From positions 514,786,001 to 514,850,000 of the forward strand of contig NC_067400.1 of the NCBI RefSeq assembly GCF_016432865.1: 64,000 nt of DNA, given 5' to 3'. The stretch's first letter is position 1; the number at the start of each line of letters is the position of its first letter. Positions 11,785 to 29,042 of the stretch are shown piece after piece. The stretch is from Antechinus flavipes. Its lineage: Eukaryota. The notes beneath the pieces are model-generated. The model was not told the origin of the DNA, made no database searches, and was given only the letters and a program-made list of their open reading frames with translations. The translations under genes and the position numbers were made by a program.

Positions 11785-13452
11785 TTTGCTCTCCAGAATA
11801 TCATATTCCAAGCTCTCTGATCCTTTAATGTAGAACCTGATAAATCCTGTATCATCTTGACTATGACTCCATGATATTTAAATCGTTTCTTTTTGGGTGC
11901 TTGCAGTTTTTTTCTCTTTGATTTGGGAGCTCTTGAATTTGATTATAACATTCCTTGGAGTTTTCATTTTAGGATCTCTTTCAGAGGGTGGATTCTTTCA
12001 AGTTCCATTCTACCCTCTGGTTCTAGAATACAAAGGCAATTTTGCCTTGACAATTTCTTGAAAGATATTGTCCAGGGTCTTTCTTTTGATCATGGCTTTC
12101 AGGTAGTCCAATAATTTTTAGATTCTCTCCTGAATCTATTTTTTCTAGGTTAATTGTTTTTCCAATGAGATATTTCACATTGTCTTCTATTTTTTATTCT
12201 TTGCTTTTGTTTTATTGTTTCTTGATTTTTCATACAGCCATTAATATCCATTTGCTCAATTCTAATTTTTAAGAGATTATTTTCTTCAATGAGCATTTAT
12301 ATTTCCTATTCCTTTTGGCCAATTCTACTTTTAAAGTAGGTTTTTTCCCCTAATGAATTTTTGTGCCTCTTTCTTCATTTGGTTCATTCTGCTTTTTAAG
12401 GAATTCTTCTCCCTACTGGCTTTTTGTATCTCTTTTACTGTTTGGCCTAGTCTATTTGTTTTTTAAGGTGTCATTTTCTTTAGTATTTTTTAAGGTCTCC
12501 TTTACCAAGCCTGTTTATGATTTTCTTGTATCATCCCATTTCTCTTTCCAATTTTTCCTCCACCTCTCTTATTTGATTTTTAAAATCCTTTTTGAGCTCT
12601 TTCATGGCTTGAGACCAATTCATATTTTTCTTAGAAGCTTTTGGATGTAGGAGCTTTGACTTTGCTATCTTCTTCTGAGTCTGTGTTTTAATCTTTCCTG
12701 TCACCATAGTAACTTTCTATGATCAGAATTGTTTTTCTGTTGCCTGCTCATTTCCCCAGCCTATTACTTGACTTTTAACTCTTTGTTAAAGTAGGTCTCT
12801 GCTTTCAGGATGGAGAAGGCCTCTGTCCCAAGCTTCAAGGATTTTGTATAGCTATTTCCAGAGATACTTTTAGGGACCTGTAAGTTTTCAGTTCTTTCAA
12901 GGTGGTGTGATCTAAGGAATCATATGCTTACTATTTTTTGGCCTATTGGAGACTATAAGTACTCTTCTCTGTCTTGGAACTGTTACAATGATTCCTGCTT
13001 TCCTGTAGCTGCAAGCTCTAGTGTGCTAGTACTCCTCCTGAAACTGCCACTTAGGACTGTAACCGGAAATGAGTGAGAGCAAAAACGACAGAGTCCTGCC
13101 TCCGTGTCAGTACTAACAAAGAGCTCCTGTAATTTCCTTCTGACCAGCTGTTTGACTCCCCTCTCCAATCTGTGGGTTGAAAGCTCCAGATGCAGCAACT
13201 GAATCATTTGCTGGAGCTGGATCTTTGCTGGGACTAGGCCTGTGCTGGTAAAGCTTGATCTGCCCTGTGTTCCACTCTCACCCAGGTGTAACAGATCTTT
13301 TTTGTTGACTAAGTTGACTTCAGCTGGAAAATTATTTCCCTCCATCCTTTTGTGAGTTCTGATGCTTCAGGAATTGTTTTGTGGCATTATTTAATGGCGC
13401 TGGGTTTGGGGTGAGCTCAGCTAAGTTGCTGTCCATTCAAGCCATCTTGGCC
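11785..13452 (-). mobile_element. Old degraded L1 (or HAL1) 5' UTR + ORF1 fragment
   Basis: Relic reading KYHGVIVKMIQDLSGSTLKDQRAW aligns with the ORF1 C-terminal half of the young L1 at 24201-25265; GCCAAGATGGC YY1-like motif at its 5' end (~13441-13451). Confidence 0.75.
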
Positions 13453-14012: not shown

Positions 14013-14444
14013 ACCTATCATTTCTCCTATAGGCTAAATATTTCCAGTTCCTTCAGCCAATTTTCAAATGATAGGATCTTAAAGCCATTTACTGTTCTGC
14101 TCAAAGTTTACTTTACAATGTAGCACTCAAAATTAAGCACAAAAACTCTAGGATTTGGAAGAGGCTGGTAGAAGGAATTAAAGGAAAGGAAAATTAAATA
14201 TGAATGGATAAATGAATTCTATGAGATAGGCTATAATAGGTTAACTATGTCAAGACTACTACAGCAGAGGAGCTGTAGTGGGGATTCTGAGGAAGCAATA
14301 TGAGTGGAAGACAGAAACAACAGCTACTATATGAGTTTAGATATGATGAGCAAAGGAGAACCATGATGCAAAAAGTTATCATGTTTGAGCAAGATTACTA
14401 CAGCAGAGATATAATGAATGAATGAATTAAAGAAAGAACAGTTA

Positions 14445-14612
14445 GGAGCAGCTAGAAAATACAGTGAATAGAACAGTAACCCTGAAGTCAGGAGGACCAG
14501 AGTTCAAATCTAGCTTCAGACAATTAACATTTATTAGCTGTGTGACCCTAGGTAAGTCATTTAACCTCAAATGCCTTGCCAAAAAAAAAGAAAAGAAAAA
14601 AAGAGAGGAAAA
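14445..14612 (+). mobile_element. WSINE1-like SINE with A-rich tail
   Basis: gagcagctag..gaagtcaggaggaccagagttcaaatc..tgtgtgaccct; degenerate TSD aaagaac(a/t)gtt. Confidence 0.75.
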
Positions 14613-18259: not shown

Positions 18260-18905
18260 CTGAAAAGAATCCAGACCTAGTGAGAACCTGGACTTTTGAA
18301 TGGAAACTGAGGAATTTAACTCTCTCTGTAACACAGCCATCATCATCCAGCCCTCTCACGAGGTCATAAAAAATGGACTTTCTAGAAAGGGAGTTTAGGA
18401 CAAATTTTTTTGGAACAAGAATATACAGGTACCACAGGCAAGGAATCTAGCCTTGTCTGGCCAATCAGGGACAGACATGGATGAATTTTTGACTCAGAGA
18501 GGAAGACTGGATTTCTCATACCTACTCTAGATCTAAAACACATCCTAACTAGTATCATTTGCATGCCTCTAAGAAATGAGCAGTCAAGACCAATCCCCTT
18601 ATTTACCTAAATGACAGAGGAGGAATCTGAAGTCGAGAAAGGAGTCCTAAACTTGTGCTAAGTCACACAGCAAGTAAATGGCAGAATCAGAATTTGGATC
18701 CAATTTTCCTGACTCCAAATGTGGTGTTTTTTTCCTGCTCTATTCTGCTATATGATAAAGGCACTAAATCCTAGACATAACTTGGAACCTGTGGCTACCT
18801 GGCAACCATTGGTGCTGAGAACAAAAGGATACCAGAAACCAGTCTCTGTAGCCATTTAACTCTAAGCTAGGTTGGCATTTTTTTGCCTATGCACCAGTGT
18901 CTTAC

Positions 18906-22170: not shown

Positions 22171-22536
22171 AGGCAAAGATATAAGCTCAATCAATATGCA
22201 TTCCCTGTAGGAGAAAATCTTGGGGTGAGAGGGGACGAGAGGGGTTTCCTATTCAGGTATAAATTAGACTGATGACCTTTGAGAGACTTTCTAATCCTAA
22301 AGTTCTGAGATTCACCTGAAATTTCCATCGTTCATGTACCAAAACAGAAGCATCAAAGAATTTCCAAACTTTGTTCCCCAAGAAAAAGTGGAGCCCAGAG
22401 ATGATTTATCTATTAGGGAGAATAGCTGAGGGTAAGAATAGAGAAGGGAAAAAGACAAGAAAATGAAGGCACCTCGTTTAAGGAAAAAGCTAGACGAGAA
22501 GCAAAGCAGAGTAAAGACAGAAAGCTAGCTACTTAC

Positions 22537-22637
22537 AATACTTCGAAGCAATTTGTCCCCACCACTGAAAGTGACAGCCAGCATAGAGGCACATTCCTCT
22601 GCATAGAACGGCATACGTCCCTCCTCATCTACGGCAC
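22537..22637 (-). CDS. PCSK7: PC7 coding exon 7
   Basis: [33 protein letters not shown]; 101 nt. Confidence 0.97.
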
Positions 22638-23069
22638 CTGGGCCAAGTAGAGAAAAACAGGGAATTAAGATCAAAGGTTAACTCTGTGAGTATTATTTTT
22701 TAAAGCTATAAAGTCATCCATTGTGCTGCAGAGTATTATGCCTGAACTGAGTCAAGATAGTCCTCAACCCATGAACATGTGAGCACCAAAAAACCTTAGT
22801 TAGAATGGCAATCTCAGGCATCCTATTATGCCTGAAATCCAGTCTTATTAACTCAAGGGAATTGTCATTAACACAATAGGGCTTTCATAAAAAAAGTAGG
22901 TTAGTCATAAGCCAGTCATTCTCATGGCAGAAGACCTATAAAAAAATATTCTGAAATACAGATTTAGATAATAAGGGACTTGAGACAATGATTAAAAGAA
23001 ATTTCTGATCACTAAGACTTCTACAGAGGTCCTGAAAGCTTATGGGAAGCACTCTCTTCACAAGATCAT

Positions 23070-23185
23070 AGATCTAGAGGTAGGAAGGGACCTTAGTGCT
23101 CATTTAGTCTAATGTCTTCATTTTACAAATGAAGCCCAAAGAGGCTGTTACTTGGCCAATGTCATACAGTTAGGAAGTAGAATCT
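23070..23185 (-). mobile_element. MIR-family SINE, 3' part (split by L1)
   Basis: acttcctaactgtatgacattggccaagt..catttgtaaaatg..ctaaggtcccttcc continues the MIR head at 25875-25935. Confidence 0.7.
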
Positions 23186-23697
23186 AGTATTCTATTTACC
23201 TCTTTGACTTCTTTCTTATTTATTTTGTGGTTTGATTTATCTAATTCTGAGAGTGCAAGGTTAAGATCTCCCACTATTATAGTTTTACTGTCTATTTCTT
23301 CTTGCAGCTCTCTTAGTTTCTCTTTTAAGAATTTAGATGCTACCCCACTCGGTGCATATATGTTTAATATAGATAGTGCTTCATTATCCATGCTACCCTT
23401 TAGCAAGATATAGTGCCCTTCCTTATCTCTTTTAATTAGATCAATTTTTGCTTTAGCTTGATCTGAGATCAGGATGGCTACCCCTGCTTTTTTGACTTCA
23501 CCTGAAGCATAGTAGATTTTGCTCCAACCTTTTACCTTTAACCTGCATGTATCTCCCCGCTTCAGGTGTGTTTCCTGTAAACAACATATTGTAGGATTCT
23601 GGCTTTTAATCCATTCTGCTAATCGCTTCCTCTTTATGGGGGAGTTTACCCCGTTCACATTTATGATTAGAATGACCAATTCTGTATTGCTTGCCAT
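23170..23697 (-). CDS. L1 ORF2p N-terminal APE-like endonuclease fragment (175 aa, truncated)
   Basis: INVNGVNSPIKR, CLQETHL, NIYAPS, IVGDLN motifs; runs off the element to a stop in flanking MIR. Confidence 0.9.
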   Translation of the reverse strand: MASNTELVILIINVNGVNSPIKRKRLAEWIKSQNPTICCLQETHLKRGDTCRLKVKGWSKIYYASGEVKKAGVAILISDQAKAKIDLIKRDKEGHYILLKGSMDNEALSILNIYAPSGVASKFLKEKLRELQEEIDSKTIIVGDLNLALSELDKSNHKINKKEVKEVNRILDSTS

Positions 23698-24200
23698 CTT
23701 GTTAACCCCGGTTTATGCTTTTCTCCCTTCTTTCCCCTTTCCCCCCCTTCCCAGTATTAAGCTTGTGAGCACCACTTGCTTCTCACAGCCCTCCCTTTTT
23801 AGTATCCCTCCCCCCGCCTTAGAGTTCCTCCCCCTATCTTATCCCTTTCCCTCCCAGTTCCCGTATTCCCTTCCACTTAGCTTATTCCCTTCTCACTTTT
23901 CAATGAAGTGGGAGAAGTTTCACCATAGATTGAATATGTCTTAAGATTTTTCACTTAAAGCCAATTCTGAAGGCAGTAAGATACCCACTATATTCATCCC
24001 CCTCCCTTCTTTCTCTCAGATATAATAGGTTTCCTATGCCTCTTCATGAGATGTACTATCCCCACTTTACCCTTTTTCTGGTACAATGTCCTTTCCACAT
24101 CAATTTCTAGAAGAAGGTATACATGTATTCTTTATACATCTATATAGTCAAAATATAGTTCCCAAGATTAATCTTTACCTTTTTAGATTTCTCTTGAGTT

Positions 24201-25265
24201 CTATATTTGTAGATCAAACTTTTTGTTAAGTTCTGGCTTTTTCATCAGAAATAGATGAAATTCGCTTACTTCGTTGAATGTCCATCTTCTTCCCTGGAAA
24301 AAGATGCTCATTCTTGCTGGGTAAGTTATTTTTGGTTGCATACCAAGTTCCTTAGCCTTTCGGAATATCATATTCCAGGCCCTTCGATCTTTTAATGTGG
24401 ATGCTGCCAGATCCTGGGTGATCCTTATTGTGGCTCCTTGATACTTGAATTGGGTTTTTCTAGCCGCTTGCAATATTTTTTCCTTCATCTGAGAGTTCTG
24501 GCATTTGGCCACTATATTCCTTGGTGTTTTGATTTTAGGATCCCTTTCAGTGGGTGATCGATGAATCCTTTCAATGTTTATTTTTTCCTCTGTTCCTATG
24601 ACTTCTGGGCAGTTCTCTTTGATAATTTCCTGGAAAATAGTCTCCAGGCTCTTTTTTTCATCATTCTTTTCTGGGAGTCCAATGATTCTCAGATTGTCTC
24701 TCCTGGATCTGTTTTCCAGGTCTGTTGTCTTCCCCAGAAGGTATTTCACATTTTTCTCCATTGTTTGATTTTTTTGGATTTGCTTGACTGATTCTTCTTG
24801 TCTCCTCGAGTCATTCAATTCCATTTGTTCGACCCTGATTTTCAGTGAAGTATTTTCTTCGCTCACTTTTTTAAGATCTTTTTCTAATTGTCCAATTGAG
24901 TTCTTTTGTTCTGTGGAATTTTTTTCCATTTCGCCAATTTTGTTTTTTAGAGAGCTATTTTCTGTTTCCAGTTCACCAATCCTATTTTTCAAGGATTTTA
25001 CTTCTTTATCCACTCTCTCTTTAACTGACTTCTCCAGGCTCTTTTGCCAAGCCTCACTCTGCTTTTCCCATTTTTCTTCTAGCTCCCTTGTGAGAGCTTT
25101 TTTAATTACTTCTATGAGGTTCATCTGTGCTGAGGAACAGATGATCTCCTCCTTTGGGGATTCATCTGGGGATTGTCTGTTTTTAGTCTCCTCAGGATTT
25201 AGAGTCTGCTCTCTATCTGTATAGAAGCTGTCAAGGGTTAAAGTCCTCTTCAGCTTCTTGCTCAT
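24201..25265 (-). CDS. L1 ORF1p (coiled coil, RRM, CTD), intact 354 aa
   Basis: Heptad region, LENRSRRDNLRIIGLPE, IERIHR, TPRNIV, YPAR; no stops or frameshifts. Confidence 0.95.
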   Translation of the reverse strand: MSKKLKRTLTLDSFYTDREQTLNPEETKNRQSPDESPKEEIICSSAQMNLIEVIKKALTRELEEKWEKQSEAWQKSLEKSVKERVDKEVKSLKNRIGELETENSSLKNKIGEMEKNSTEQKNSIGQLEKDLKKVSEENTSLKIRVEQMELNDSRRQEESVKQIQKNQTMEKNVKYLLGKTTDLENRSRRDNLRIIGLPEKNDEKKSLETIFQEIIKENCPEVIGTEEKINIERIHRSPTERDPKIKTPRNIVAKCQNSQMKEKILQAARKTQFKYQGATIRITQDLAASTLKDRRAWNMIFRKAKELGMQPKITYPARMSIFFQGRRWTFNEVSEFHLFLMKKPELNKKFDLQI

Positions 25266-25845
25266 TCTGTCTAATAATCAGAGACAGACTAGCAAAGAAA
25301 AACAGAAAAAACTGGAGTCTTTCTTTGGGGGGGGGCTGGGTGTGTTATCGAGCTTCCTCTCCAGACTGCGGGGGGCAGCAGTGAGGCACTAGCAGGACTG
25401 TGTACGCGTGCGCTCTGAGATCCCAGAGCGTGCTGAGTCACTGTGGGGGGGGAAGGGGGGACGGCCAGGTCCCGAGAGACTCCAGCTGTTTGGGGTTGTA
25501 TTCTTCAGCCCCGGTGTTTTTAGCTTCTCTGCTGGGCTGCTGACTTGCTGCCGGAGCAAAGCATCCAAACCTGTAGCGAAGCTCTCCCCGCAGAGACAGC
25601 TGCGATCACTCCCCACCTCCTCTCCAGTCTGCTCCCGTGCTCTCACTGCCGCTGCCCTCAGCCTGCGCCCGATCTAAAACCGTCCCAGCCCTCCAGTAAA
25701 GACAGACCTTTCTTGGCGAATCTCAAGGATGGCTTCTCTTGGTAACTATTTGTGGGTTTTTTTCAGTCAAGCATTAATTCAGAGACTTGTAATGAAGTGG
25801 ATAGTGAGAGAAAGCGTGGAGCTTATGCAGCTGTGAGCCTCCTCT

Positions 25846-25865
25846 CCGCCATCTTAACCGGAAGT
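25846..25865 (-). promoter_or_regulatory. L1 internal promoter start: YY1 site AAGATGGCGG and adjacent ETS motif
   Basis: + strand CCGCCATCTT 25846-25855 and CCGGAAGT 25858-25865 at the extreme 5' end of the L1. Confidence 0.7.
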
Positions 25866-25874
25866 CGCCAGTGA

Positions 25875-25935
25875 AGATTCTGAACCGAGGCCCTCTGGCT
25901 CCAAGTCCAATGTTCATGTCATTGTACTGCAGTGT
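25875..25935 (-). mobile_element. MIR-family SINE, 5' part (split by L1)
   Basis: gaacattggacttggagccagagggcctcggttcagaatc resembles the MIR head up to the B box. Confidence 0.7.
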
Positions 25936-26079
25936 CATTCTTTGCAAAGATGGCAAGTGACACACCCGGAGACTTAACTATGAGGCACTGAAAACCTAAA
26001 AAGCCATCCCCACCCAAACCCCGCCCCCCTGAAATACAGAAAACTGCCCAGACACAGACACACAACATTCATGTGTTAC

Positions 26080-26218
26080 CTATGGTAACTGTATAGATAG
26101 AGTTGGCGTATCCATCGTAGTTGCAGTTGTCATTGTGCTGGCCCCCATTGCCACTGGCTACCACAAAGATACTCCCGAAGCCTCGGCGACCAGCAATCAC
26201 TCCATGTTGCAAGGCAGC
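26080..26218 (-). CDS. PCSK7: PC7 coding exon 6 (oxyanion Asn, ASGNGG)
   Basis: [46 protein letters not shown]; 139 nt. Confidence 0.97.
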
Positions 26219-26618
26219 CTAAGAAGAAGAAATGCTGGAGCTTCAGAATGAGAGGCTCTAAATGTTTTCCCTGAAAGATTTCTTACTTCCCAAGCTCAAA
26301 ATTCAAAGAGGGCCTGGCAAACAAGTGTGACTAAAAAAAGTTAGGACTAAGAAGAGGAATTCTGTGGGTGTTCTTTGCTTATTTGCTGTTTTGTATGGGA
26401 AAAGCAATTAAGAATAAAAAAATCCCCCGACCATTTCCAACTCTCTTTGCTCTAAGCCCATTTCTCCTCAAAACCAGAACAAGGTTGTTTTTTCCCCTCA
26501 TGAAAGGAATTCCCAGAGCAGAAGGTAAAAGTCTGGCCCTGATTCATGGTAGTAATGTTCTAGAACAATGAGAATGAGAATGATATTACCAAAGATTTGG
26601 ACTTCAGCTCCTTGTTAC

Positions 26619-26673
26619 CTTTCCAAGTTGGTGGGGGCCATCAACTGTCTTTCCATCATCATCTGGTCCCCAG
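26619..26673 (-). CDS. PCSK7: PC7 coding exon 5
   Basis: [18 protein letters not shown]; 55 nt. Confidence 0.97.
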
Positions 26674-27173
26674 CTGTTGAGAGACAGCAGTGAAAAGTTC
26701 CTTGTAGAGCTAGCCCTTAGCCCTCTCAGACCCAGTTGGCCATCCATTCTTTCAATTTTTTTGTCCCCTTCAGAGACTTTAGAACATTCGAACTATCTGA
26801 AAGGACAGGGATATTGGAAGACTCCCAGGCTTTTCCTGGGTTATCAAGATCAATGCCTTCTATTTTACAAATGGGGAAAAATGGTATATAAATAGTTAGT
26901 AAGATTTAAAGTTACTCAGTGTTAAACCCTTCAAATTTGGAGAACTTTAACCTTCCCTTAAAACAAATTACTTTCTTAGGCCTAGTATAGCGAAAAACAA
27001 ATCTAGTCAGGCCTGATAAAGAAGAATAATGAAAGTAGGATATAGGAGAACATAGCTATCCCTCTTGCCTGGGTAAATCCTAGCCTTTGGCCAGAAGGTA
27101 GAATTTTTGGGCATGGAAGCCCTGTGTATTGAGCAGGGGAGCTCTTTGTTCTTTTTTCAAAAGGAAATATATG

Positions 27174-27325
27174 AGGGGCAGCTAGTTGGTGTAGTGTATA
27201 GAGCATCAGCTTTGAAGTCAAGAGACTCTGAGTTCAAATCTGATCTCAGACACTTAACACTTCTTGGCTATGTGACCCTGAGCAAGTTACTTAACCCCAA
27301 TTGCCTCTCAGCAAAAAGAAAAAAA
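27174..27325 (+). mobile_element. WSINE1-like SINE with perfect 15-bp TSD
   Basis: AAAAGGAAATATATG at 27159-27173 and 27326-27340; ggggcagctag head; poly(A) tail. Confidence 0.88.
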
Positions 27326-27452
27326 AAAAGGAAATATATGTCGTTGATAATACTATCCTAATCCAATCTGGGTGACAAGTTCAACTGATCCCATAGGGAT
27401 AGTCTAACTCTAGTTCCTTTTTGACAATCCCTGCTAATCTAAGGCAGAGAAA

Positions 27453-27500: not shown

Positions 27501-28025
27501 AAAAGGCAAGGATGTGGTATCAGGACTGCTTTTGTCCTGTGATTGGAGGGGAAAACGTTCTCTTTTCTGAGAATTCCTTAGATTAGTAGACTGGTTTATT
27601 AGAGTAGTCCATTAATCTAAGGATTGAGCTTGGATGGGGATTCATGTGATGATGGCTCAGGAGAATAGGAAAATGAATTGGTATGTTGTGGGAACAGCAC
27701 TAGATTTAAACTGTGAAGGTCTGGGTTCTGGTTCCAGTTCTGCTGCTTACTAACTGTACCCACTTTGGGTCTGAGTCCCACTTCTGCCACTTTGTACTTG
27801 TGTGACCCTGGTTAACTCCCTTGAACCCACTGGGACTCAGTTTTTTCATGATCTTTATGGTTTCTTTGAGCTGCACAGTCTGAGTCCACCATGTACTTGT
27901 ATTCCACAATGGATGAAATGTCATGAGACTCTTCTGGGAACTTGCCAGGCATAGCCCTGATGCACAAGTTTCTGCTCCAAGTCTTTCAATTCTTCCCACT
28001 GGAATGGAATGGATGATTCTCTTAC

Positions 28026-28116: not shown

Positions 28117-29042
28117 CTAAGCATTGAGAAAACAGGAGGGGAAAAGAAAGAGATATCCCAATCTCACCTTAATGCAAGGCTCGGAGATTGAAATCTGTGG
28201 GGAAGAACCTTTGGTTAGAAGATGCAGACCAATATTCTCTTCCTAGCTTTACTAATTTACCATATGGCCTTGAGGAGATACTTTAATTTCCCCTTCTTAA
28301 ATGGAGTAGCAACATACTACTTTTTTCTTGGAAGGAGTGAGGGTTATATGAACCTAGGGAAAAAATAGTTTGCTCTCTCCCCTTCTGAACTAGAAATTGC
28401 CTCAGTTGCAAAAGGATACTGCCCTCTGCTGGAAAACAGGAGAAAAACAAAAGTACTAAGGAATTAAGCATTTATTATACTGAAGAATTAACCTTGGTCA
28501 AATAGACAAGGGTTGAGATGTAACTGGGGAGCTATGGAAGGCCTTTATGTGCAAGACAGAATCGCCCAGGTTACCCTGGAAAGAGAGAGCGTGTCATGGT
28601 ATACTAGACAGCCTGATATCAGGAAGAATGAGTTCAAATCCTTATTAACACTTATTAACTGTCTGACCAGGAAAACAATGTATGACCTTTAGTTCCTTCA
28701 TCTGCAAAATGAGGATAATAATACCCACAAGTACCTACTTCACAGCATTATGAGGCTTAATTGAGATTTTAAATATATATAGCACTTTGCCAATTTTAGA
28801 GCACTCTTCAAAATGCTAGGTATTATTATTATTTTTATTGGTTTGCACACAAAACTTATCCTTTTACTACCAGAGCAGGAACTAGAAGAGGAAAATGGTA
28901 CAAGAGGAGCCTTATCCAATCAGAGGAAATAGAACACTTTGAAGCTTTGTCTTACTCAGGAACTGTTAGAGGAAGAAAGATTCCTTGATTATTCATTTGT
29001 TAACCAACTAAGAAAAATGTCTGGAGTGCAGACGTATATTCC

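What the first reader, a model, noticed from the sequence alone, without database searches (positions are those of the whole stretch)
23179..25881. 3'-truncated L1 with no poly(A) or TSD, splitting a MIR at a possible palindrome with junction microhomology
Seen: the element keeps its extreme 5' end but stops inside the endonuclease domain, the reverse of normal truncation. The MIR halves on either side rejoin with little or no loss. AGAATCT (23179-23185) + AGATTCT (25875-25881) rejoin into a perfect 14-bp palindrome. The L1 junction text TCTAGTATTCT differs by one base from the rebuilt target TCTAGATTCT. Established: internally primed and endonuclease-independent L1 insertions exist and are linked to DNA break repair. 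Inference: a break end annealed inside the L1 RNA and primed ~2.7 kb of cDNA to the 5' end. Caveats: if the 5 nt AGTGA (25870-25874) belong to the flank there is no palindrome, and a full-length insertion followed by microhomology-mediated deletion is not excluded.
Basis: partly seen in the sequence, partly recalled or inferred. Interest (0 to 1): 0.78.

Follow-up and report, generated by a model that had tools for sequence, protein, structure and literature searches.

The report
Tail-less 5'-complete L1 insertion confirmed

Summary
The core observation holds. A minus-strand L1 piece (23183-25869, 2687 nt) has a complete 5' end, an intact 354-aa ORF1 and the first 171 codons of ORF2. It stops inside the endonuclease domain with no poly(A) and no target-site duplication, and it splits a MIR-type SINE.

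Contigs from two related species (runs X20 and X1) each cross the site uninterrupted. They join window 23182 to 25870 with one letter between, so the insertion is derived and cost the target one letter at most.

TCT (23183-85) is L1, and AGTGA (25870-74) is flank. The 14-bp palindrome therefore does not exist in the empty site, and the quoted microhomology rests on a wrong target model. Real microhomology at the truncated end is 0 nt.

The locus meets all four published criteria for non-classical (endonuclease-independent) L1 insertions (Sen et al. 2007). It is unusual among them in being 5'-complete and nearly loss-free.

Verdict: new member of a known kind, of moderate interest. Still open:
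- the identity of the single lost letter;
- whether the site is polymorphic within the species;
- whether reverse transcription started inside a full RNA or at the end of a shortened RNA.

The scan's first readers also noted several similar tail-less L1s elsewhere in this genome; none of those is checked.

The parts
23040..23182 (+). Left half of an old MIR-type SINE (target DNA). Its last letter before the insert is 23182.
   Evidence: Empty-site contigs of X20 and X1 end their left piece at 23182. The stretch resembles other MIR-type SINEs in the window.
23183..25869 (-). The whole inserted DNA, 2687 nt: the 5' part of a young L1.
   Evidence: It is absent from the one-piece contigs of organisms F and A that cover both flanks. 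Organism D contigs run 22300-23211 and 25846-26700 with 0 differences.
23183..23697 (-). ORF2 start: 171 codons plus 2 nt of the endonuclease domain, still open. The frame then runs into the flank and stops at 23170.
   Evidence: ORF list. Pfam Exo_endo_phos E 9e-15, profile positions 4-170 of 225. Truncation point fixed.
23219..23224 (-). AATAAA hexamer whose last base lies 36 nt upstream of the truncation point; a possible premature RNA 3'-end signal.
   Evidence: Read directly from the sequence. The same 67 nt are present in the Sminthopsis L1. Its function was not tested.
23698..24200 (-). 503-nt spacer between ORF1 and ORF2, purine-rich on the L1 strand (C/T-rich on the + strand).
   Evidence: Coordinates. 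It aligns contiguously with Sminthopsis L1 copies.
24201..25265 (-). Intact ORF1, 354 aa.
   Evidence: It is 86% identical to a 354-aa Sarcophilus L1 ORF1 protein.
25266..25866 (-). L1 5'UTR. The canonical first base is at 25866 (GACTTCCGG...), with a YY1-like AAGATGGCGG at 25846-25855.
   Evidence: Three Sminthopsis copies start at GACTTCCGG. One of them (L001:3355-9836) has a poly(A) tail and a 9-nt TSD. A nested L1 copy in run X20 ends at 25866 plus one letter (table 5c). The YY1 reading rests on my own knowledge of human L1.
25867..25869 (-). Three extra letters (GGC on the L1 strand) between the canonical L1 start and the flank. They could be a 5' extension or untemplated letters.
   Evidence: They are present in the window, absent from the empty site, and absent or different in the Sminthopsis copies.
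25870..25960 (+). Right half of the MIR-type SINE. It begins AGTGAAGATTCT.
   Evidence: The right pieces of the empty-site contigs start at 25870. The alignment with other SINE copies is ungapped across the junction.
26072..26212 (-). Exon of the host gene, a kexin/furin-type proprotein convertase that an earlier scan note calls PCSK7. The L1 lies in the adjoining intron in the same orientation.
   Evidence: phmmer against PDB: kexin and furin, E 2.6e-13. Scan note s1-184935.

Best explanation
This is a non-classical L1 insertion of the endonuclease-independent or break-repair type. After the host lineage (organism D) split from organism F, the chromosome was broken inside an old MIR-type SINE, between window letters 23182 and 25870. 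The 3' end of the + strand (...GTAGAA, or that plus one letter) served as the start for reverse transcription of an L1 RNA. Synthesis did not start on the poly(A) tail. It started at codon 172 of ORF2. Either the start was internal on a full RNA, or it was at the 3' end of an RNA that was already shortened there. Synthesis ran off the capped 5' end of the RNA, and the product was joined to the other break end. The result is 2687 nt of L1 with no tail, no duplication, no shared letters at the truncated junction, three extra letters at the 5' junction, and the loss of one target letter.

Shown here:
- the derived state of the insertion;
- both boundaries to the base;
- the absence of all TPRT hallmarks;
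- 5' completeness.

Inferred:
- the RNA intermediate (from the 5' end coinciding with the L1 start);
- the origin of the break;
- which strand primed;
- independence from the L1 endonuclease.
For: - Empty site (table 8). A single 2866-nt contig of X20 (organism F) and a single 4668-nt contig of X1 (organism A) lie on 22300-23182 and 25870-26700 with one record letter between. Their flank differences are 22/1714 and 54/1714, so A is the outgroup and the empty state is ancestral.
- Junctions in the host species. Organism D contigs cover 22300-23211 and 25846-26700 with 0 differences, at depths of 33.9 and 30.9.
- 3' truncation. L1 homology ends exactly at 23183, and the L1 continuation differs from the flank at the very next base.
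- 5' end. L1 copies in Sminthopsis begin at the homologous GACTTCCGG. One of them is a 6.5-kb copy with a poly(A) tail and a TSD.
- Target site. It reads GTAGAA/.AGTG on the primed strand, with no T in the four positions before the break, against the TTTT/A consensus.
- Published criteria. All four criteria of Sen et al. 2007 (PMC1920257) are met.
- Direct joins are known. Joins without microhomology are documented for RT-dependent, EN-independent L1 insertions at Cas9 breaks (PMC9237045).
Against: - No base pairing between the primer end and the L1 RNA is visible, so 'internal priming by annealing' has no direct support.
- Independence from the endonuclease cannot be shown from sequence, because L1 EN sometimes cuts poor sites.
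- The organism D contigs reach only 29 and 24 letters into the L1, under the tool's 31-letter bridging rule.
- Run X17 may be the very sample the assembly came from.
- The interior 2.6 kb is vouched for by the assembly alone.
- The single letter between the flanks in the empty site was not shown by the tool.
Confidence: 0.8

Rival explanations
1. An endonuclease-started but aberrant TPRT event. L1 EN nicked a poor site, reverse transcription began internally on the RNA, and the second strand broke at almost the same position, so no duplication arose.
For: Other first-reader notes in this genome describe 5'-complete, tail-less L1s that do have perfect TSDs (unverified). That would imply internal initiation at EN nicks happens in this lineage. 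The minus strand 4 nt away reads TTCT/AC, a weak EN-like site.
Against: The strand that must have primed has AGAA before the break, with no T at all. No duplication of any length is present. A nick at the TTCT/AC site would predict a 4-5 nt duplication, and none is seen.
Confidence: 0.1
2. A full-length L1 inserted classically, and a later deletion removed its 3' 3.8 kb, the tail and one TSD copy.
For: Deletions inside young L1s are common. Organism E and a second organism D individual were not examined (one search gave no flank coverage for X19).
Against: The left deletion breakpoint would have to fall within one letter of the original integration point, removing the whole tail and the whole left TSD copy but no flank. 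The filled and empty sites differ by one letter only. Sen et al. use the same argument. The target is not an EN-type site.
Confidence: 0.05
3. DNA-templated repair: a break was patched by copying or capturing a piece of an L1 DNA copy from elsewhere, with no RNA step.
For: Templated insertions at breaks are known (for example PMC5110952, listed). There is no tail and no TSD.
Against: One end of the piece coincides, to within 0-3 letters, with the transcription start shared by independent L1 copies. DNA copying would have no reason to stop there and would carry donor flank. A length of 2.7 kb is long for such patches (my own knowledge).
Confidence: 0.03
4. Assembly artefact: a collapsed or chimeric join inside a high-copy repeat.
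For: The L1 family is extremely abundant, with summed word depths over a million across the insert. No single listed record spans the whole insert.
Against: Both junction sequences occur in run contigs with 0 differences at single-copy depth. Those contigs continue from unique flank into the L1 without a branch at the junction.
Confidence: 0.02

Closest known systems
Non-classical L1 insertions (NCLI) in the human genome, Sen et al. 2007, PMC1920257. Endonuclease-independent L1 retrotransposition in repair-deficient cells (Morrish et al. 2002) is cited from my own knowledge.
   Same: 3' truncation, no poly(A), no TSD, a target unlike TTTT/A, and an empty ancestral site seen in related species.
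   Different: 18 of the 21 human cases are also 5'-truncated by 3 kb or more, and 18 of 21 deleted target DNA. Here the 5' end is complete and only one target letter is missing. Those authors also analysed microhomology between the insert ends and the flanking DNA (section heading; their results were not read); here it is zero at the truncated end. The host is a marsupial.
RT-dependent, EN-independent L1 insertions at CRISPR/Cas9 breaks, Tao et al. 2022, PMC9237045
   Same: [quoted passage not shown]
   Different: Those insertions start at the L1 3' end and are 5'-truncated. This one lacks the 3' end and keeps the 5' end.
HAL1 ('half-L1') ORF1-only retrotransposon families (from my own knowledge)
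   Same: The unit consists of a promoter and ORF1 with no working ORF2.
   Different: HAL1 families have their own 3' end with a tail, are multi-copy and insert with TSDs. Here there is no tail and no TSD, and L1 contigs that reach the truncation point continue as ordinary ORF2 (table 7).
Twin priming (5'-inverted L1 insertions; Ostertag and Kazazian 2001, from my own knowledge)
   Same: A DNA 3' end starts reverse transcription at an internal position of the L1 RNA and copies toward the 5' end.
   Different: Twin priming leaves an inverted 5' piece next to a tailed 3' piece inside a TSD. Here there is no second piece, no tail and no TSD.
Classical TPRT insertion, for example the Sminthopsis copy L001:3355-9836
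   Same: The same L1 lineage and the same 5' terminus.
   Different: That copy is 6.5 kb, ends in 13 A and is flanked by AACATTTTT on both sides. The window copy has none of these features.

Membership tests
Non-classical / endonuclease-independent L1 insertion (criteria of Sen et al. 2007) | 3' truncation well beyond 20-25 bp | tested here: met
   The L1 ends at ORF2 codon 172, and related full-length copies continue for about 3.7 kb more.
Non-classical / endonuclease-independent L1 insertion (criteria of Sen et al. 2007) | No poly(A) tail | tested here: met
   On the L1 strand the junction reads ...ATACTAGA|TTCTACTTCC, with no A-run.
Non-classical / endonuclease-independent L1 insertion (criteria of Sen et al. 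2007) | No target-site duplication of any length | tested here: met
   The empty-site contigs lie on ...23182 and 25870... with no overlap and one unplaced letter.
Non-classical / endonuclease-independent L1 insertion (criteria of Sen et al. 2007) | Target differs clearly from the EN consensus TTTT/A | tested here: met
   The primed strand reads GTAGAA/.AGTG: 0 of 4 T before the break.
Non-classical / endonuclease-independent L1 insertion (criteria of Sen et al. 2007) | Pre-insertion state verified in related species | tested here: met
   Organisms F and A each have a one-piece contig across the site.
Non-classical / endonuclease-independent L1 insertion (criteria of Sen et al. 2007) | Actual independence from L1 endonuclease, and dependence on reverse transcriptase | not testable with these tools
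   This needs an experimental system. Here it is only inferred from the target sequence and from the 5' end coinciding with the L1 start.
Classical TPRT L1 insertion | Poly(A) tail, TSD and a TTTT/A-like site | tested here: not met
   All three are absent. The Sminthopsis copy, used as a positive control, shows a poly(A) tail and a TSD.
HAL1-like ORF1-only retrotransposon family | Several copies sharing the same 3' end, with tail and TSD | tested here: not met
   This copy has no tail and no TSD. The 51-54 contigs with loose ends at 23183 agree on ordinary ORF2 sequence. A full census of the genome was not possible.
Twin-priming L1 insertion | An inverted 5' segment joined to a tailed 3' segment within a TSD | tested here: not met
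   There is a single collinear L1 piece, colinear with Sminthopsis copies over positions 4-2687, and no second segment.
MIR-type SINE (the target) | Similarity to the MIR core region, continuous across the rejoined flanks | tested here: met
   The core motif search and alignments to other copies in the window are ungapped across the junction. No curated MIR consensus was available in the tools.

The most novel reading that the evidence does not exclude
The locus may be one of a class. First readers of this scan noted at least five other 5'-complete, tail-less, 3'-truncated L1s in the same genome, several with perfect TSDs (none verified). If these hold up, the antechinus L1 would start reverse transcription away from the poly(A) tail unusually often. 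One possible reason is that many L1 RNAs end early: here an AATAAA lies 36 nt upstream of the truncation point. Such a process would keep producing promoter-plus-ORF1 units, which would be the raw material of HAL1-like families.
Probability: 0.12. Interest if true: 0.6.

Novelty: new member of a known kind. Interest (0 to 1): 0.35.

Why it matters
Natural non-classical L1 insertions with both the filled and the empty state in hand are few, and as far as I know the described ones are mostly from primates. This one is unusually clean, and several of its features bear on mechanism:
- It is young, with both reading frames still open.
- It is resolved to the base at both ends and is complete at the 5' end.
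- It cost the target only one letter.
- It has no microhomology at the point where reverse transcription must have begun.

The last point bears on whether L1 reverse transcriptase needs base pairing to start on a broken DNA end. The insertion also leaves an intact L1 promoter and ORF1 in the sense orientation inside an intron of a proprotein convertase gene.

It does not change the known picture of L1 biology. The more striking claims (palindromic target, junction microhomology) do not survive.

Tried and rejected
- Other L1 copies in the window, to fix the boundaries: only one old ORF1 fragment at 11796-12287, 71% identical.
- Exact look-up of the ORF1 protein and of the best Sarcophilus relative P0151: neither is on record.
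- Scan of metagenome contigs for the 22-nt L1 5' end: no match.
- Representative-protein search with the ORF2 start: the top-ranked hits, and all those at 77-81% identity, are fragments of about 100-230 aa; it was not used further.
- Scan notes searched by sequence: blank.
- Bacterial promoter/terminator scan: irrelevant to this genome.
- Twin priming with a staggered cut at the nearby TTCT/AC: rejected because the predicted 4-5 nt duplication is absent.
- Premature polyadenylation followed by normal TPRT: rejected as the full explanation because there is no A-run and no TSD. A shortened RNA template remains possible.

All comparisons are between natural copies.
Full report
**What is there**

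Between 23183 and 25869 the window carries the front part of an L1 on the minus strand.
- ORF1 (24201-25265) is open for 354 aa. It matches the L1 RNA-binding domains Transposase_22 (E 4e-14) and Tnp_22_dsRBD.
- ORF1 is 86% identical to a 354-aa Sarcophilus L1 ORF1 protein.
- A 503-nt spacer follows. ORF2 then starts at 23697, and its product matches the endonuclease family Exo_endo_phos over profile positions 4-170 of 225.
- The frame is still open where the L1 ends, and runs five more codons into the flank.
- The window has no other young L1.
- Earlier follow-up notes of the scan name the genome as the yellow-footed antechinus.
- A neighbouring minus-strand exon (26072-26212) is of the kexin/furin type (E 2.6e-13).

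**The empty site**

The left flank was used to find sequencing runs. Runs of several coded organisms hold it: D at 0.96 of the sampled words, E at 0.67, F at 0.65 and A at 0.32. Contigs of X17 (D), X19 (E), X20 (F) and X1 (A) were then laid on 22300-26700.
- In organism F, one 2866-nt contig lies on 22300-23182 and on 25870-26700, with exactly one contig letter between the two pieces.
- In organism A, one 4668-nt contig does the same.
- The flank differences are 22 in 1714 letters for F and 54 in 1714 for A. A is therefore the more distant, and the uninterrupted state is ancestral.
- In organism D, two contigs with no differences run 22300-23211 and 25846-26700, at depths of 33.9 and 30.9. They pass from unique flank into the L1 by 29 and 24 letters without a branch. 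That is about as far as 31-letter-word contigs can go into a repeat this abundant.
- Organism E gave no flank coverage, so nothing can be said about it.

**The 3' boundary**

Two independent lines agree to the base.
- The empty-site contigs stop at 23182.
- The window is identical to a full-length Sminthopsis L1 for 67 nt up to ...ATACTAGA, whose last A is window 23183. The L1 then continues AAAGTTTGATATGATAGATC while the window continues TTCTACTTCC.
- In runs X19 and X20, 54 and 51 L1 contigs carry loose ends just before 23183. Their consensus is the reverse complement of AAAGTTAGGTATGATAGATCTTTGGAGAAA, which is the ordinary ORF2 continuation (table 7).

Nothing is shared between the L1 continuation and the flank, and no filler lies between them.

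**The 5' boundary**

The empty-site contigs resume at 25870, so AGTGA (25870-74) is flank. On the L1 strand the insert begins GGCGACTTCCGGTTAAGATGGCGG.

Four loci from Sminthopsis crassicaudata, another dasyurid, were fetched through L1 ORF1 proteins. Three of them hold L1 copies with a 5' end. All three begin at the homologous GACTTCCGGCCAAGATGGC, directly after unrelated flank, preceded by 0-3 G-rich letters. One of them, L001:3355-9836, is a 6.5-kb copy that ends in 13 A and is flanked by AACATTTTT on both sides. It serves as a classical control.

A nested L1 copy in run X20 ends at window 25866 plus one letter (table 5c). The canonical first base is therefore 25866. The three letters 25867-69 are a short 5' extension or untemplated addition.

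The AAGATGGCGG at 25846-55 sits about where human L1 has its YY1 site near the transcription start. That comparison comes from my own knowledge and was not tested here.

**The target**

The empty-site model (23060-23182, one unknown letter, then 25870-25960) aligns across the junction with MIR-type SINEs elsewhere in the window. The alignment with the copy at 18601-18780 has no gap there. The MIR was split with the loss of at most one letter.

The pre-insertion text is ...GGAAGTAGAA.AGTGAAGATTCTGAACC...

**Mechanism**

The locus meets the four criteria that Sen et al. 2007 used for non-classical L1 insertions: 3' truncation, no TSD, no poly(A), and a target unlike TTTT/A. Here the primed strand has AGAA before the break.

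The insert ends at the L1 transcription start. That is what run-off reverse transcription of an RNA would give, and it is not what copying of L1 DNA would give.

A full-length insertion followed by deletion would need a deletion endpoint within one letter of the original integration point. I rate that at about 5%.

What the sequence does not show is any pairing between the break end and the L1 RNA. There are two possibilities:
- The reverse transcriptase started on an unpaired internal site.
- The RNA already ended there and was engaged at its 3' end without pairing. Non-LTR reverse transcriptases can do this (my own knowledge).

An AATAAA whose last base lies 36 nt upstream of the truncation point (23219-24) makes a shortened RNA conceivable. 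The lack of any A-run argues against ordinary polyadenylation.

Direct, homology-free joins are documented for RT-dependent, EN-independent L1 insertions at Cas9 breaks.

**Comparison with known cases, and novelty**

This is a new member of a known kind. Among the 21 human cases, 18 were also 5'-truncated by 3 kb or more and 18 deleted target DNA. This case differs in three ways: it is 5'-complete, it is almost loss-free, and it sits in a marsupial.

The insertion is absent from a species that differs by 1.3% in the flanks. On an assumed mammalian neutral rate, that makes it a few million years old at most (inference).

Several first-reader notes in this genome describe further tail-less, 5'-complete L1s, some with TSDs. 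None of them is verified, and I could not reach those sequences. If they are real they would point to a lineage-wide habit, which I give as the novel case.

**Limits**
- The letter lost from the target was not displayed by the tool.
- Only one reads call was allowed, so the second individual of organism D and organism E remain unexamined.
- X17 may be the sample that the assembly was made from.
- The interior of the insert rests on the assembly alone.

Noticed in passing
window 26072-26212 (-): An exon of a kexin/furin-type proprotein convertase (E 2.6e-13 against PDB kexin and furin). The L1, with its intact promoter region and ORF1, lies in the adjoining intron in the same orientation as the gene.
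   Followed up: partly
window 23219-23224 (-): An AATAAA inside the ORF2 endonuclease region, with its last base 36 nt upstream of the truncation point. The same 67 nt are conserved in the Sminthopsis L1. It could mark premature 3'-end formation of L1 RNA.
   Followed up: no
L001:3355-3399: The full-length Sminthopsis L1 starts with two tandem copies of a 22-23-nt unit (GGACTTCCGGCCAAGATGGCGG). The unit holds an ETS-like CTTCCGG and a YY1-like AAGATGGCGG. The window copy and two other Sminthopsis copies have one unit only.
   Followed up: partly
window 23698-24200 (-): The spacer between ORF1 and ORF2 is 503 nt long and purine-rich on the L1 strand (C/T-rich on the + strand). That is far longer than the 63 nt quoted for human L1. 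It aligns with the Sminthopsis copies.
   Followed up: no
window 11796-12287: An old L1 ORF1 fragment, 71% identical to the young copy. It is the only other L1 similarity in the window.
   Followed up: no
window 18600-18780, 14440-14610 (-), 27170-27340 (-), 27700-27870 (-), 28560-28730 (-): Further MIR-type and marsupial MIR-related SINE copies. They were used only as comparison for the split SINE.
   Followed up: partly
run X19 (organism E): This run held 0.67 of the flank's sampled words in the index, yet almost none of its contigs were laid on the flanks. Whether organism E carries the insertion is therefore unknown.
   Followed up: no
tables 4, 5c and 7 (L1 interior, e.g. 25027, 25756, 23885, 24101): Recurrent small indels, joints and loose ends among the family's contigs within the 5'UTR, ORF1 and the ORF1-ORF2 spacer. 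They point to several sub-lineages of this very abundant young L1 in all four species.
   Followed up: no
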